The notes under the pieces are model-generated. The model did not search any database and was not told the origin of the DNA. It was given only the letters and a program-made list of their open reading frames with translations. 64,000 bases of DNA from Felis catus (Eukaryota): the NCBI RefSeq assembly GCF_018350175.1, contig NC_058386.1, positions 6,820,001 through 6,884,000 on the forward strand. Reading direction: 5' to 3'. Shown one piece after another: positions 31,101-37,100 of the stretch. Made by a program: the position numbers and the translations under genes. The stretch's first letter is position 1. The number at the start of each line of letters is the position of its first letter.

Positions 31101-34100
31101 TGCAAGAAAGATGAAAAGTGGTCAAAATCACAAGTATTGAGAAAAATACAGACTTCTGAGTGCCAACAGATTCCCGAATTGTGGGAGAAAATTGTGGGCA
31201 ACGGAAGGAAAGAAGGACTTGTGAGAGCAATAAAGTATTGTGGGAATGACAGCGGATCATGGAAGAGAAAGGGCAACTGTGGGAGACTGTAAAACAAACT
31301 CTAGGAAAACTGTTTTGTGGGACAGATTAGGAATGTGGGGGGGACAACGGATTATAGGAGAAAAATAATTAGATTGTGGGAGAGGTAAGCAATTGTGAGA
31401 CCAAATAAATTAACAAGGAAACAAAAGGCAACACGATATAAAACAATCACCAAGGAAAATGGAGATTTGTGGCAAACAAAAAAGACACCAGGATTGTGAA
31501 AGAAAAGAAGGAATTTTGAGGGAAAAAAAGAGTATTGTGGGAGAGACAGGGAATTGTGAGAAAAACATATAGGCTCATGGGGGAGAGAAGGAAATTTGGG
31601 GAGACAGTTATGAGAACAAGGAATTATAGGAGAAACACGAAATTGTGTGACAAAATATCGTAGGGAAAGGAATTAGGAAAATAAAACATTATGCAAGAGT
31701 GGAAAAATGTGGAATACACAACTTTGCTACCAATGAAACTATGAAGAATAGAGAACTGTTGAGCCAATCGAGAAGAGGCAGAATGTGATTTGTGTGGGAA
31801 TGACAAGGGATCACAGGAATTGTTGGAGAAAAAAAGAAACTGGGAAAAATTGTGGGAGGATAGAGAGCTGTGGGAAAAGGACTGGATTGCAGGGGAGCTA
31901 GGGAATGGTGGGAGGAGGAACTGGCTGTACTAGAAGTGGGGAACCGTTGCAGAAATTATAAGGATTATAACTGGATTAGAAGGAAAGCAATAGGTTCTCA
32001 GGGAGGTGAGGACTAGAGGTCAGCAGGAAAAGGGCAGAGAGTGGGGGAGAAGCAACGGATTATGAGACAGGCCAAGAATGGGAGAGGAGCAATGGATTGT
32101 GGGAGAAGCCAAGATGGGAAAGGATTGTGTAGAGTTCGTTAACGGTGGTGAAGCAAGGCGCTGTGGGAAAAGCAATGTATTCTGGGAAAGTCCAAGATGG
32201 CGGAGAAGCAAAGGATTGTAGGAGGGGTCAATATGGCAGAGAAGCAAAAGATTCTGGTACAGTCCGTTAACGGTGGCTAGGCAATGAATACTGGGAAAAG
32301 CAATGGGTTGTGGCAGAGACCAAGATGGCGGAGAAACAAAGGATTGTGAGAGAAGCCAAGATGATGGAGAAGCAAAGGATTCTGGTAGAGTCCGTTAGCA
32401 GCTAGGCAATGAACTGTGGGAAGAGCAATGGATCATAAGAAGGGCCAAGATGGCGGAGAAGCAATGAACTGTGGGAGAAGGAATGGATTGTGGGAAAGGT
32501 CAATGGCGGAGAAGCAAAGGATTGTGGGAGAGTTAACGGTGGTTAAGCAAAGCACTGTGGGAAAAGCTATGTATTCTGGTAAGGGCCAAGATGGCGGAGA
32601 AACACAGGATTGTGGGAGAAACCAAGATGGCGGAGATGCAATGAACTGTGGGAGAAGCAATGGATTGAGGGAGGGGCCAAGATGGTGGAAAGGCAAAGGA
32701 CTGTGGGAGAGTCCGTTAACGGTGCAGCAAAGCACTGTGGGATCAGCAATGTATTCTGGGAAGGGCCAACATGGCAGCGAAGCAAAGGATTGTGGGAGAG
32801 TCCGTTGATGGTAGCTCAGCAAAGCACTGTGGGAAAAGCAATGTATTCTGGGAAGGGCCAAGATGGCAGAGAAGCAATGGACTGTGGGAGAAGCAATGGC
32901 TTGTGGGAGAAGCCATGATGGCGGAGAAACAAAGGATTGTGGGAAAGTCTGTTAACAGCAGTTAAGCAAAGCACTGTGGGACAAGCAATGTATTCTGGGA
33001 AGGGCCAAGGTGGTGGAGAAGCAAAGGATTCTGGTTGAGTCCATTAATGGCAGCTAGGCAATGAACTGTGGGAAAAGCAATGGATTGTGGGAGAAGTCAA
33101 GATGGTGGAGAAGTAATGAACGATGGGAGAAGCAATGGATTGTGGGAAGGCCAATGGTGAAAAAGCAAAGGACTGTGGGAAAGTCTGTTAACGGCATTCA
33201 GCAAAGCACTATGGGAAAGGCAATGTATTGTGGGAAGGGCCAAGATGGCGGAGAAGCAATGGACTGTGGGAGAAGCCAAGACGGCGGAGAAGCAAAGGAT
33301 TCTGGTAGAGTCCGTTAACGGCAGCTAGGAAATGAACTGTGGGAAAAGCAGTGGATTGTGGGAGAAGTCAAGATGGCGGAGAAGCAATGAACTGTGGGAG
33401 AAGCAATGGGTTGTGGGAAAAGTCAAGATGGTGGAGAAGTAATGAACTGTGGGAGAAGCAATGGATTGTGGGAAGTGCCAATGGCGGAGAAGCAAAGGAT
33501 TGTGGGACACTCCGTTAACGGTTCAGCAAAGCACTGTGGGAAAAGCAATGTATTGTGGGAAAGGCCAAGATGGCGGAGAAGCAATGGACTGTGGGAGAAG
33601 CAATGGGTTGGGGGGAAGTCAAGATGGTGGAGAAGTAATGAACTGTGGGAGAAGCAATGGATTGTGGGAAGGGCCAAAGGCCGAGAAGCAAAGGACTGTG
33701 GGAGAGTGTTAACGGCTGCTCAGCAAAGCACTGTGGGAAAAACAATGTATTCTGGGAAGGGCCAACATGGCAGAAAAGCCATGAACTCTGGGAGAAGCAA
33801 TGGGTTGTGGGAGAAATCAAGATGGCAGAGAAGCAAAGCACTGTGGGAAAAGCAATGTATTGTGGGAAGGGCCAAGATGGTGGAAAAGCAATGGATTGTG
33901 GGAAAGCCAATGCTGAAGAAGCAAAGGACTGTGGGACACTCCGTTAACGGCTGTTCAGCAAAGCACTGTGGGAAAAACACTGTATTCTGGGAAGGGCCAA
34001 CATGGCAGAAAAGCCATGAACTCTGGGAGAAGCAATGGGTTGTGGGAGAAGTCAAGATGGCAGAGAAGCAAAGCACTGTGGGAAAAGCAATGTATTGTGG

Positions 34101-37100
34101 GAAGGGCCAAGATGGCGGAAAAGCAATGGATTGTGGGAAGGCCAATGGTGAAGAAGCAAAGGACTGTGGGACACTCCATTAACGGCTGTTCAGCAAAGCA
34201 CTGTGGGAAAAGCAATGTATTGTGGGAAGGGCCAAGATGGCGGAAAAGCAATGGATTGTGGGAAGGCCAATGGTGAAGAAGCAAAGGACTGTGGGACACT
34301 CCGTTAACGGCTGTTCAGCAAAGCACTGTGGGAAAAGCAATGTATTGTGGGAAGGGCCAATGGCGGAGAAGCAAAGGACTGTGGGAGAGTGTTAACGGCT
34401 GTTCAGCAAAGCACTGTGGGAAAAGCAATGTATTGTGGGAAGGGCCAAGATGGCGGAGAAGCAATGGACTGTGGGAGAAGCAATGGGTTGTGGGAAGGGC
34501 CAAGATGGTGGAAAAGCAATGGATTGTGGGAAAGCCAATGCTGAAGAAGCAAAGGACTGTGGGACACTCCGTTAACGGCTGTTCAGCAAAGCACTGTGGG
34601 AAAAGCAATGTATTGTGGGAAGGGCCAAGATGGTGGAAAAGCAATGGATTGTGGGAAAGCCAATGCTGAAGAAGCAAAGGACTGTGGGACACTCCGTTAA
34701 CGGCTGTTCAGCAAAGCACTGTGGGAAAAACACTGTATTCTGGGAAGGGCCAACATGGCAGAAAAGCCATGAACTCTGGGAGAAGCAATGGGTTGTGGGA
34801 GAAGTCAAGATGGTGGAGAAGCAATGAACTGTGGGAAAAGCAATGTATTGTGGGAAGGGCCAAGATGGCGGAGAAGCAATGGACTGTGGGAGAAGCCAAG
34901 ACGGCGGAGAAGCAAAGGATTCTGGTAGAGTCCGTTAACGGCAACTAGGAAATGAACTGTGGGAAAAGCAGTGGATTGTGGGAGAAGTCAAGATGGCGGA
35001 GAAGCAATGAACTGTGGGAGAAGCAATGGATTGTGGGAAGGGCCAATGGCGGAGAAGCAAAGGATTGTGGGAGAGTGTTATCGGCTGCTCAGCAAAGCAC
35101 TGTGGGAAAAGCAATGTATTGTGGGAAGGGCCAAGATGGCGGAAAAGCAATGGATTGTGGGAAGGCCAATGGCGAAGAAGCAAAGGACTGTGGGACACTC
35201 CATTAACGGCAGTTCAGCAAAGCACTGTGGGAAAAGCAATGTATTGTGGGAAGGGCCAAGATGGCGGAAAAGCAATGGATTGTGGGAAGGCCAATGGTGA
35301 AGAAGCAAAGGACTGTGGGACACTCCGTTAATGGCAGTTCAGCAAAGCACTGTGGGAGAAGCAATGGATTGTGGGAAGGGCCAATGGCGGAGAAGCAAAG
35401 GATTGTGGGACACTCCGTTAATGGTTCAGCAAAGCACTGTGGGAAAAGCAATGTATTGTGGGAAGGGCCAAGATGGCGGAGAAGCAATGGACTGTGGGAG
35501 AAGCAATGGGTTGTGGGAGAAGTCAAGATGGTGGAGAAGTAATGAACTGTGGGAGAAGCAATGGATTGTGGGAAGGGCCAATGGCGGAGAAGCAAAGGAT
35601 TGTGGGAGAGTGTTAACGGCTGCTCAGCAAAGCACTGTGGGAAAAACAATGTATTCTGGGAAGGGCCAACATGGCAGAAAAGCCATGAACTGTGGGAGAA
35701 GCAATGGGTTGTGGGAGAAGTCAAGATGGTGGAGAAGTAATGAACTGTGGGAAAAGCAATGTATTGTGGGAAGGGCCAAGATGGCAGAAAAGCCATGAAC
35801 TGTGGGAGAAGCAATGGGTTGTGGGATAAGATGGCAGAGAAGCAAAGCACTGTGGGAAACGCAATGTATTCTGGGAAGGGCCAACATGGCGGAGAAGCAA
35901 TGGACTGTGGGAGTAGCCAAGATGGCGGAGAAGCAATGAACTTGGGAGAAGCAATGGATTGAGGGAAGGGCCATGATGGCAGAGAAGCAAAGGATTGTGG
36001 GAGAAGTCAAGCTAGCAGAGAAGCAAAGGATTTGGTAAAGTCTTAACGGCAGTTAAGCAAAGCACTGTGGGACAAGCAATGTATTCTGGGAAGGCCCAAG
36101 ATGGTGGAGAAGTAATGGACTGTGGGAGAAGCGATGGGTTGTGGGAGAAGCCAAGATGGTGGAGAAGCAAAGGATCATGGGAGAAACCAAGGGTTCTGGC
36201 AATGAACTGTGGGAGAAGCAATGGATTGTGGGAAGGGCCAAGATGGCGGAGAAGCAATGAACGGGTGGGAGAAACAATGGGCTGTGGGAGAAGTTAGATA
36301 GCACAGAAGCAATGGATTGTGGGAATGGCCAAGATGGCAGAGAAGCAAAGGATTCTGGTAAAGTCCGCTAAAGGCGGCTAGGCAATGAACTGTGGAAAAA
36401 GCAACGGATTACGGGAAGGGTCAGTAATGGCGGAGAAGCAAGGGACTTGGGGAGAATGAAAGGATTGTGGGAGAAGTTGGTAATGGTGGTGAAGCAGTAG
36501 ACTCAGAGAAGCAAGGGACTGTGGGAAAGGCCAAGATGGCAAGAAGCAATGAACTGTGGGAGAAGCAAGGGGTTGTGGGAGAAGTAACGGATGGCTTAAT
36601 GCATATGGAAAGAACGAATAACCGCATTTAAAAATTTTCTGGGGTTCCTAAGACAGAAACCAACCAAGTTTAGGTTTGTGAGAAGTCCCATTTTTCTTAA
36701 CTTTTAGTCCCGAGGCAAATTTCAATTCCTTGTGAAGATATTTTACATGACACTGTCGTAAGAAATTACACACAGATCCCCTCAATGGAAACTTGCTACA
36801 GTCACAAAACATGATCATCAAATCAATTCTCCCACACCAGGTAGTCCTCTAAGCAAACCTACAGTCTGTACTTAAAAGCCTTATGTAGGCCTTTGGGGAC
36901 ACAGATAAAATGCAAGCTCTTTAGCAGAATCTACAAAAGTCCTTCATCATCTGTTCCCAGGCTGCCTCTCCGGATCCGGAAAACCCATGACACCATGTCG
37001 TGCTGAGGCCACCCCAAACCACATGTAAACATTCTGCTCTGTATCTCTGGCCTTTCTCCTCTCCCATTCAGGTCTCCTGTGCAACACCACGTCTGAACAT

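What the first reader, a model, noticed from the sequence alone, without database searches (positions are those of the whole stretch)
32030..36590. A 4.5-kb intronic satellite built almost wholly from ZNF143-, YY1- and MYB-like motifs: a candidate multimerised protein-docking / chromatin-hub element
Seen: read on the minus strand, a typical stretch is TTCCCACAATCCATTGCTTTTCCGCCATCTTGGCCCTTCCCACAATACATTGCTTTTCCCACAGTGCTTTGCTGAACAGCCGTTAACGG. A constant ~17-nt core alternates with a small vocabulary of reused spacers. Known motifs: the core resembles the ZNF143/Staf site (TWCCCAYAATGCAYYG), one spacer is the YY1 site (CAAGATGGCGG) and another is a palindromic double MYB site. Inference: three distinct promoter/architectural factor motifs tiling nearly the whole repeat is unlikely for a random satellite. 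It could be a very dense binding platform (cryptic promoter or enhancer cluster, factor sink, or an architectural element analogous to the X-linked DXZ4/FIRRE arrays) inside GPR143 intron 8 and ~10 kb past the TBL1X 3' end. I know of no description of it.
Basis: partly seen in the sequence, partly recalled or inferred. Interest (0 to 1): 0.9.

Follow-up and report, generated by a model that had tools for sequence, protein, structure and literature searches.

The report
Intronic minisatellite with transcription-factor-like motifs
A real 4.5-kb tandem repeat in the last intron of GPR143 is made of units that resemble ZNF143/RBPJ, YY1 and MYB binding sites, but its structure and decay pattern are those of an ordinary, methylated, ageing minisatellite, not a protected protein-docking element.

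Summary
Window 32030-36590 is one head-to-tail array, all units on the minus strand. It has 152 copies of a 17-19 nt core and three reused spacer types, which together cover 97.6% of the array. The location is as stated: GPR143 intron 8, about 10 kb past the TBL1X poly(A) signal.

The motif likeness is real at sequence level:
- 58 exact RBPJ 8-mers, 18 exact YY1 11-mers and 9 exact double-MYB palindromes.
- 133 cores meet the published minimal ZNF143 site definition.

The functional inference is not supported:
- The multiplicity comes from amplifying a higher-order repeat of 125-235 bp, about a dozen founder modules.
- CpG observed/expected is 0.36, and CpG positions have decayed ten times faster than neighbouring positions, always by transitions.
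- Motif integrity follows copy age: intact in the centre, eroded at the edges.
- A degenerate relic interrupted by SINE and L1 insertions continues to about 27.85 kb.
- There is no CTCF motif, and the unit is far below macrosatellite size.
- In carnivores this gene lies in the pseudoautosomal region, which weakens the DXZ4/FIRRE analogy.

Verdict: an ordinary minisatellite carrying many potential factor sites. Interest is low to moderate.

The parts
32030..36590 (-). Main tandem array: 152 cores (consensus CCCACAATCCATTGCTT) interleaved with YY1-like, CCAAT-like and MYB-like spacers. No transposon insertion inside it.
33600..35620 (-). Youngest, most homogeneous part. Higher-order repeats of 125 bp (four cores plus three spacers) and 235 bp at 92-93% identity. 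Internal duplications 1.9-2.1 kb apart at 94% identity reach into it.
27853..32029 (-). Degenerate relic of the same 18-19 nt unit (TTCCCACAAT-type), without recognisable YY1-like or MYB-like spacers. It is interrupted by the transposon insertions listed below.
30330..30740 (.). Carnivore-type tRNA-derived SINE inserted in the relic (approximate limits, identified by eye).
29030..30080 (-). 3' piece of an L1 with poly(A), inserted in the relic (approximate limits, identified by eye).
25081..25175 (-). Coding part of GPR143 exon 9 (SDASTVEIH...QGDL, stop at 25083-25081), preceded by a CCCCAG acceptor. AATAAA lies at 24814 on the minus strand.
50585..50798 (-). GPR143 exon 8, part seen in the open frame. 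The donor GTGAGC starts at 50584. Intron 8 therefore spans 50584-25176 and contains the array.
18613..22052 (+). TBL1X last coding exon (CVLDLRK, stop) and 3' untranslated region up to the AATAAA at 22047. The array starts about 10 kb further on.

Best explanation
This is an ordinary, ageing minisatellite with higher-order structure in the last intron of GPR143.

How it arose (inferred from the anatomy): a pyrimidine-rich unit of about 19 nt (TTCCCACAAT-type) was multiplied by replication slippage and unequal exchange. Some units diverged into three spacer types. A block of 125-235 bp (4-8 cores plus 3-4 spacers) was then re-amplified, and segments of about 2 kb were duplicated again.

Since then the array has not been homogenised. 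The best copies are 92-94% alike. It has decayed like methylated bulk DNA, fastest at CpG and most at the edges.

The many ZNF143/RBPJ-, YY1-, NFY- and MYB-like sites are real strings that could bind these factors if the chromatin were open. Their number reflects amplification of a few founder modules, not selection for a docking platform.

The likely driver of expansion is the high male recombination of the carnivore pseudoautosomal region next to its boundary. This step is inferred from the literature and not shown here.
For: 1. Higher-order grammar. Core subtypes are tied to fixed places relative to the spacers, for example the 125-bp word 'F n B y D A m'. The nested periods of 19, 36, 55, 89, 125, 235 and 393 bp agree with this. 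The sites are therefore copies, not independent occurrences.

2. Age gradient. Deviation at the otherwise invariant core positions is 0.8-3.7% in the centre and 9% at both edges. The CCCR..C12 signature is kept in 100% of central cores and in 53-69% of edge cores. Beyond the left edge the unit survives only as a relic, cut by a SINE and an L1 piece.

3. CpG decay. At the CpG of the YY1/CCAAT spacers, 27 copies keep CG, 20 have CA and 13 have TG. Within the 19-nt spacer each CpG base deviates in 26% of copies, against 2.6% for non-CpG positions, always by transition. The two CpGs of the MYB-like spacer decay the same way. Array CpG observed/expected is 0.36, against 0.52 for the window.

4. Classical minisatellite traits. 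The unit is 19 nt and the array 4.6 kb. Strand asymmetry is strong: 70% purine on the plus strand and G skew 0.48.

5. No recent homogenisation. The best internal duplicates are 92-94% identical.

6. Published context.
- The carnivore pseudoautosomal region (about 6.6 Mb) reaches the terminus of SHROOM2, the gene next to GPR143 (PMC3759724; PMC3564682).
- Pseudoautosomal introns in mouse fill with minisatellites through frequent recombination and unequal crossover (PMC13050634).
- ZNF143 motifs that sit in repeats (B2 SINEs) are not bound in vivo (PMC11687419).
Against: 1. At the founder level the matches are better than one expects by luck. There is a 16-nt ZNF143 consensus at 1 mismatch and an exact 11-nt YY1 string in the same 235-bp block. 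My rough estimate, which is inference and not a library scan, is about 1e-4 per pre-named motif and about 0.01-0.05 jointly after allowing for roughly a thousand known motifs.

2. The variable core positions (1, 7, 9, 11, 13) all lie in the part of the ZNF143 site described as degenerate, and the positions described as highly conserved never vary. This fits constraint, but the test gives only p = 0.15 (5 variable positions among 18, none among the 5 conserved ones).

3. The rest of the window holds no other large minisatellite, so a general 'pseudoautosomal repeat richness' is not visible here.

4. CpG decay shows germline methylation. It does not exclude factor binding in hypomethylated cell states.

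5. No chromatin, expression or cross-species data could be consulted.
Confidence: 0.6

Rival explanations
1. Functional dense docking platform. The array recruits ZNF143/ZNF76, RBPJ, THAP11, YY1, NFY and MYB-family factors. It would act as an enhancer or promoter cluster for GPR143/TBL1X, or as a local factor sink, in some cell type such as hypomethylated germ cells or early embryo.
For: - The array holds 133 cores with the minimal published ZNF143 signature, 58 exact TGTGGGAA, 18 exact CAAGATGGCGG, 9 exact double-MYB palindromes and 9 RRCCAATSR, all in one orientation.
- Conservation among cores mirrors the conserved positions of the ZNF143 site (PMC3082894).
- RBPJ and THAP11 bind the TTCCCA part of such sites in vitro (PMC3627581).
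- Satellites can serve as factor platforms, as HSat3 does with TEAD (PMC11526998).
Against: - No core matches the fuller ZNF143 consensus. The G at position 11 is present in only 23 of 152 cores, and then with two other deviations.
- There is no ACTACA extension.
- The sequence is CpG-poor and its CpGs have decayed, which breaks the exact YY1 string in more than half of the spacers.
- Motifs erode with age at the edges and in the relic.
- Bona fide ZNF143 binding is promoter-centred, and motifs in repeats are unbound (PMC11687419).
Confidence: 0.15
2. X-chromosome architectural element of the DXZ4/FIRRE kind, a superloop anchor or boundary bound on the inactive X.
For: It is a tandem array on the X that carries YY1-like sites, and YY1 binds DXZ4 on the inactive X (PMC3287207).
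Against: - There are no CTCF core motifs.
- The unit is 19-235 bp, against 3-kb monomers in 12-100 copies (PMC3287207).
- CpG observed/expected is 0.36.
- ZNF143 has been ruled out as a general looping factor (PMC11687419).
- In carnivores GPR143 lies in the pseudoautosomal region, which is shared with the Y and not silenced (PMC3759724).
Confidence: 0.03
3. Meiotic role in the pseudoautosomal region. Like the mouse mo-2 minisatellites, the array would help load the double-strand-break machinery or otherwise favour X-Y exchange close to the boundary.
For: - The position is inferred to be just distal to the carnivore pseudoautosomal boundary (PMC3759724, PMC3564682).
- Mouse pseudoautosomal minisatellites are described as critical for sex-chromosome segregation (PMC13050634).
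- The array is the only large tandem repeat in 64 kb.
Against: - At 4.6 kb it is tiny beside the mouse arrays, each with more than 500 repeats.
- There is no meaningful similarity to the printed mo-2 unit. By eye, 10 of 12 bases agree over one short stretch, which I estimate as about 0.3 expected by chance.
- The array is old and not homogenised (92-94%), unlike a site of very frequent exchange.
Confidence: 0.05
4. RNA-level effect inside the GPR143 pre-mRNA. The sense strand carries 62 acceptor-like YYYYYYNCAG strings and many UCUU/CUUCUCC tracts, 7-11 kb upstream of the true exon 9 acceptor. These could soak up U2AF or PTB-type proteins, or act as decoy acceptors that slow removal of the last intron.
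For: There are 62 matches on the sense strand, against about 10 in Markov controls and about 3 per 4.56 kb elsewhere. The array is in the sense orientation of GPR143.
Against: - No matching donor sites were noticed.
- The feature follows automatically from the pyrimidine-rich CACAG core.
- GPR143 is a tissue-restricted gene (my own knowledge), so the intron RNA is scarce.
- No expression data could be obtained.
Confidence: 0.05

Closest known systems
Classical GC-rich minisatellites (VNTRs) with variant repeats and higher-order structure, including those filling pseudoautosomal introns (PMC13050634)
   Same: Head-to-tail units of tens of bases. A kilobase-scale array. Strong purine/pyrimidine strand asymmetry. 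Interspersed variant units arranged in higher-order blocks. Degenerate edges. A location inferred to be a region of high recombination.
   Different: Length polymorphism is not shown. The unit sequence is unrelated to mo-2 or other published cores that I could compare. The surrounding window is not otherwise repeat-filled.
DXZ4 macrosatellite (PMC3287207)
   Same: A tandem array on the X chromosome with YY1-type sites in one orientation.
   Different: DXZ4 has 3-kb CpG-rich monomers with a promoter and a CTCF site, and is hypomethylated and bound only on the inactive X. Here the units are 19-235 bp, there is no CTCF motif, the sequence is CpG-poor, and the locus is probably pseudoautosomal.
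Staf/ZNF143 binding site SBS1, with overlapping RBPJ and THAP11 recognition of TTCCCA (PMC3082894, PMC3627581)
   Same: CCCR at positions 3-6 and C at position 12 are kept in 133 of 152 cores. The TTCCCA submotif is present. The length and most degenerate positions agree.
   Different: The array is not at a promoter or CpG island. Position 11 is rarely G and position 18 is T, not G. There is no ACTACA extension. Binding is untested. Published work finds repeat-borne motifs unbound (PMC11687419).
Human Satellite 3 as a transcription-factor platform (PMC11526998)
   Same: The concept is the same: a tandem repeat whose unit carries factor motifs in very many copies.
   Different: HSat3 spans megabases and its binding was shown experimentally. 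This array is 4.6 kb and nothing is shown.

Membership tests
Minisatellite / VNTR with higher-order repeats | Head-to-tail units of about 10-100 bp forming an array of 0.5-30 kb | tested here: met
   152 cores at 19 or 33-37 nt spacing over 4561 bp
Minisatellite / VNTR with higher-order repeats | Variant units arranged in repeated higher-order blocks, with degenerate array edges | tested here: met
   A 125-bp and 235-bp grammar at 92-93% identity. Edges deviate 9% against 1-4% in the centre.
Minisatellite / VNTR with higher-order repeats | Length polymorphism between individuals | not testable with these tools
DXZ4/FIRRE-type X-linked architectural repeat | A CTCF site in each unit | tested here: not met
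   0 matches to CCASYAGRKGGC on either strand of the array
DXZ4/FIRRE-type X-linked architectural repeat | Macrosatellite unit of kilobase size, CpG-rich, with its own promoter (PMC3287207) | tested here: not met
   Largest period 393 bp. CpG observed/expected 0.36, GC 50%.
DXZ4/FIRRE-type X-linked architectural repeat | Chromatin state specific to the inactive X | not testable with these tools
   No chromatin data. The literature places GPR143 in the carnivore pseudoautosomal region (PMC3759724), which argues against it.
ZNF143 (Staf) binding site | CCCR at positions 3-6 and C at position 12 of an 18-bp site (PMC3082894) | tested here: met
   133 of 152 cores. C12 is present in 151 of 152.
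   0 exact matches, 28 at 1 mismatch and 38 at 2 mismatches. The mismatches sit mainly at positions 11, 1, 9 and 13. No weight matrix was available.
ZNF143 (Staf) binding site | Occupancy by the protein, typically at active CpG-island promoters (PMC11687419) | not testable with these tools
   The context is a CpG-poor intron. There are no ChIP data.
Clustered YY1 sites of imprinted or X-inactivation control regions | Several YY1 motifs in one orientation within a tandem repeat | tested here: met
   18 exact CAAGATGGCGG and 25 AAGATGGC, all on the plus strand
Clustered YY1 sites of imprinted or X-inactivation control regions | They lie in a CpG island or differentially methylated region that keeps its CpGs | tested here: not met
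   The CpG inside the motif is lost in 33 of 61 spacers, always to TG or CA. Observed/expected is 0.36.
Mouse-type pseudoautosomal mo-2 minisatellite | The 31-bp mo-2 or mo-2-like unit (PMC13050634) | tested here: not met
   Compared by eye with the printed unit. Only a 10-of-12 stretch agrees, which is within chance by my estimate.

The most novel reading that the evidence does not exclude
The array is a working high-density landing pad for ZNF143/RBPJ/YY1/MYB-family factors. It would sit at the last gene before the carnivore pseudoautosomal boundary and be active in hypomethylated germ cells or early embryos. There its open chromatin could also seed recombination, which would in turn explain why it expanded.
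Probability: 0.1. Interest if true: 0.7.

Novelty: new member of a known kind. Interest (0 to 1): 0.3.

Why it matters
If the ordinary reading is right, the value is cautionary. A tandem repeat multiplies whatever motif its founder unit happened to carry, so 'hundreds of sites' count as about a dozen observations. CpG decay and edge erosion then give a cheap sequence-only test of whether such sites have been protected.

If the array were nevertheless bound, it would be a compact natural multimer of four or five promoter-type factor sites next to a pseudoautosomal boundary. That would be useful for studying factor sinks and the link between open chromatin and repeat expansion.

It may also matter practically as a probable length-variable marker in feline GPR143, an ocular albinism gene.

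Tried and rejected
- **Sequencing runs (expression, other species, length variation).** Because the reason was not given, I afterwards sent no letters of the array to any outside search tool. That means no protein, DNA-collection, paper or findings search by sequence. 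The Rfam scans were run on the flanks only. Only local analyses touched the array.
- **Literature.** Searches for a described repeat in GPR143/TBL1X, or for ZNF143-bound tandem repeats, found nothing relevant. The one TBL1X mention in the mouse Dxz4 paper is only a map landmark.
- **Dfam/Repbase or any eukaryotic repeat library.** Not available, so I cannot say whether the unit has a catalogue name.
- **JASPAR weight matrices.** Not available. I used IUPAC strings and the textual site definition from PMC3082894. The 18-nt consensus I remember was not used as evidence.
- **L1 promoter origin of the YY1-like module.** The nearest L1 (about 42.2-44.4 kb, plus strand) is 5'-truncated ORF2 sequence and is not contiguous with the array. 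The idea is neither supported nor excluded.
- **Coding potential.** Open frames of up to 262 aa (plus strand) and 215 aa (minus strand) run through the array. I take them as by-products of a stop-poor repeat, and did not test them by homology for the reason above.
- **Substitution spectrum between long internal duplicates.** This gave only a mild CpG excess. The ungapped alignments drift out of register, so I rely on the module-level counts.
- **snRNA-type gene next to the array** (which would make a Staf site natural). None was found. The only hit is a weak U2-like copy 16 kb away.

Full report
**What is there**

Read on the minus strand, window 32030-36590 is one uninterrupted head-to-tail array. 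Tandem Repeats Finder reports nested periods of 19, 36, 55, 89, 125, 235 and 393 bp.

A Hamming scan with the 17-nt core CCCACAATCCATTGCTT finds 146 copies at 4 or fewer mismatches on the minus strand inside the interval and none on the plus strand. It finds 7 in the remaining 59 kb, four of them just left of the array. At 5 or fewer mismatches there are 152 cores. Neighbouring cores start 19 nt apart, or 33-37 nt apart when a spacer intervenes.

The spacers are a small vocabulary:
- a 19-mer CTCCGCCATCTTGGCCCTT and its variants, 48 copies;
- a shorter form CTCCGCCATTGGCCCTT, 14 copies, which reads as a CCAAT box on the other strand;
- a 20-mer around the palindrome CCGTTAACGG, 26 copies.

Cores and spacers together cover 97.6% of the array.

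**Gene context**

- TBL1X runs on the plus strand. WD40 exons lie near 0.4-0.7 kb and 17.6 kb. The last coding exon ends near 18636, and an AATAAA lies at 22047.
- GPR143 runs on the minus strand. An exon matching Pfam Ocular_alb positions 311-384 (E 6e-22) ends at 50585 with a GTGAGC donor.
- The last exon runs 25175-25081 behind a CCCCAG acceptor and ends in QGDL-stop.
- Intron 8 is therefore 50584-25176 and contains the array. The motif-bearing pyrimidine-rich strand is the sense strand of GPR143. 'About 10 kb past the TBL1X 3' end' is correct.

**The array is larger and older than stated**

Left of 32030 the same unit continues in degenerate form (TTCCCACAAT followed by pyrimidine-rich filler) to about 27853. 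A loose anchor pattern occurs 4-10 times per kb there, against about 0.1 per kb elsewhere. Tandem Repeats Finder still sees periods of 17-19 and 36 at 27.8-28.8 kb.

This relic is interrupted by a tRNA-derived carnivore-type SINE, by an L1 3' piece with its poly(A), and by another SINE. I saw no YY1-like or MYB-like spacer in it. The spacer types therefore seem to have arisen inside the younger array, plausibly from the 3' half of the core (TCCATTGC compared with GCCATTGG). That derivation is my inference.

**Higher-order structure**

I coded each core by its variable middle and each spacer by type. This shows that core subtypes are tied to fixed places in a grammar. One example is the 125-bp word 'F n B y D A m'. 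Another is the longer word 'E n B C y G H y D A m'. Shorter words derive from these by deletion.

- The central 2 kb has 125-bp and 235-bp repeats at 92-93% identity.
- Segments 1.9-2.1 kb apart are 94% identical.
- Nothing is closer than that, so the last rounds of amplification are not recent.
- Deviation at the otherwise constant core positions is 0.8-3.7% in the centre and 9% at both ends.

This is the usual life history of a minisatellite or satellite: slippage and unequal exchange at several scales, a homogenised centre and eroding flanks.

**Motif content**

Counts are for the array, with first-order Markov controls and the rest of the window for comparison.

| Motif | Array | Comparison |
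|---|---|---|
| TGTGGGAA (RBPJ) | 58 | 0.9 Markov; 0 elsewhere |
| CAAGATGGCGG (YY1) | 18 | 0.01 Markov |
| CCGTTAACGG (double MYB) | 9 | 0 Markov |
| YAACKG (MYB) | 21 and 15 on the two strands | about 3 and 2 Markov |
| RRCCAATSR (NFY) | 9 | 0.6 Markov |
| CTCF core | 0 | - |
| ACTACA | 0 | - |

For ZNF143 I used what a paper states in words. The site is 18 bp, with CCCR at positions 3-6 and C at position 12 highly conserved and the other positions more degenerate (PMC3082894).
- 133 of 152 cores meet this definition.
- C12 is the most constant position of the whole unit, present in 151 of 152 cores.
28 cores are one mismatch away and 38 are two away, mostly at positions 11, 1, 9 and 13. The rest of the window has no site within two mismatches.

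The likeness is therefore genuine, but these would be imperfect SBS1-type sites without the THAP11 extension. RBPJ and THAP11 recognise the TTCCCA part of such sites in vitro (PMC3627581). About 38% of the cores carry an exact RBPJ octamer, which is the cleanest match of all.

**Does this mean selection for binding?**

Enrichment over shuffled sequence is automatic in any tandem repeat. The relevant sample is the founder block: 8-11 core subtypes and 3-4 spacers.

At that level my rough arithmetic gives about 1e-4 for a pre-named 11-mer, or for a 16-nt consensus at one mismatch, in a 235-bp block. Allowing for roughly a thousand known motifs gives about 0.01-0.05 for the pair. This is inference, not a library scan. 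It is suggestive, not compelling.

The variable core positions (1, 7, 9, 11, 13) avoid the five positions called highly conserved in the ZNF143 site, but the chance of that is 0.15.

Three observations argue against long-term protection:

1. *CpG decay.* In the YY1/CCAAT spacers the CpG is CG in 27 copies, CA in 20 and TG in 13. Each CpG base deviates in 26% of the 19-nt spacers, against 2.6% for non-CpG positions, always by transition. The MYB-like palindrome loses its CpGs the same way. Array CpG observed/expected is 0.36, below the window's 0.52. This tenfold excess is the known signature of methylated CpG. It destroys the exact YY1 string in more than half of the modules. Many of these variants were copied along with their block, so the counts are of copies, not events.

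2. *Age dependence.* Motif integrity follows copy age and is lost in the relic.

3. *Context.* The array sits in a CpG-poor intron. Recent degron work finds true ZNF143 binding almost wholly at active promoters, finds motifs inside B2 SINEs unbound, and rules the protein out as a general looping factor (PMC11687419).

**The DXZ4/FIRRE analogy**

DXZ4 consists of 3-kb CpG-rich monomers with a promoter. CTCF and YY1 bind it on the hypomethylated inactive X (PMC3287207). Here the largest period is 393 bp, there is no CTCF motif and the sequence is CpG-poor.

Carnivore pseudoautosomal regions are about 6.6 Mb, and their boundary reaches the terminus of SHROOM2 (PMC3759724; see also PMC3564682). 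GPR143 and TBL1X lie just distal to SHROOM2. The SINEs show that this is a carnivore genome (my reading). The locus should therefore be pseudoautosomal: shared with the Y, not X-inactivated, and subject to high male recombination.

That gives a simple reason for a minisatellite to grow here, as described for mouse pseudoautosomal introns (PMC13050634). The window's GC content of 49.6% is in line with this. On the other hand, the rest of the window has no other large tandem repeat.

**Other readings considered**

- *RNA-level effect.* On the sense strand the CACAG-type cores make 62 acceptor-like YYYYYYNCAG strings, against about 10 in controls. This could matter for splicing of the last intron, but it follows automatically from the unit.
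- *Meiotic role like mouse mo-2.* This is conceivable from position alone. The array is small and old, and it is unlike the printed mo-2 unit.
- *Coding potential.* Open frames through the array are most simply stop-poor repeat artefacts.

**Limits**

I therefore have no expression, cross-species or polymorphism evidence. I kept the array's letters away from all outside search tools afterwards.

No repeat library or weight-matrix library was available. The N stretches at 42255-44392 lie inside an L1 and were left alone.

Sibling first-stage notes on the same stretch already flagged the RBPJ site and the 18 YY1 strings, and my counts agree. Other notes report ZNF143-like motif arrays in introns of other genes of this genome. 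I did not check them.

**Verdict**

The location is confirmed. The motif likeness is confirmed at string level. The functional reading is unsupported and partly contradicted.

Most likely (about 0.6) this is an ordinary, methylated, ageing higher-order minisatellite in a recombination-rich pseudoautosomal intron. A selected docking platform remains possible (about 0.15) and is cheaply testable.

Noticed in passing
window 52359-52549 (+): A full-length match to the U2 snRNA model at a modest 63.7 bits (gathering 46). It lies in a GPR143 intron, antisense to the gene, and is probably a diverged U2 pseudogene.
   Followed up: no
window 27853-32029 (-): Degenerate relic of the same 18-19 nt unit, cut by two SINEs and an L1 3' piece. 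It extends the repeat tract to about 8.7 kb and ends only about 2.7 kb upstream of the exon 9 acceptor.
   Followed up: yes
window 22047-24814: TBL1X (plus strand) and GPR143 (minus strand) converge. Their poly(A) signals are under 3 kb apart. The stretch 22.0-28.7 kb is GC-rich (56%) with CpG observed/expected 0.57.
   Followed up: partly
window 32030-36590 (-): There are 62 acceptor-like YYYYYYNCAG strings on the GPR143 sense strand, about 20 times the density of the rest of the window.
   Followed up: partly
window 42208-44461: The four N stretches (42255-42420, 42999-43128, 43938-44084, 44141-44392) lie inside a 5'-truncated L1 ORF2 on the plus strand.
   Followed up: no
window 60814-60987 (+): Two small, nearly perfect tandem repeats: 24 bp x 2.3 and 34 bp x 3, at 96-97% identity. 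They lie in a proline-rich open frame region and were not examined.
   Followed up: no
other pieces of the same genome (notes s1-810740, s1-806879, s1-813001): First-stage notes report further intronic arrays of ZNF143/THAP11-like or CCAAT/GC-box motifs (GYS1, IRF3 and others). A joint comparison would be worthwhile.
   Followed up: no
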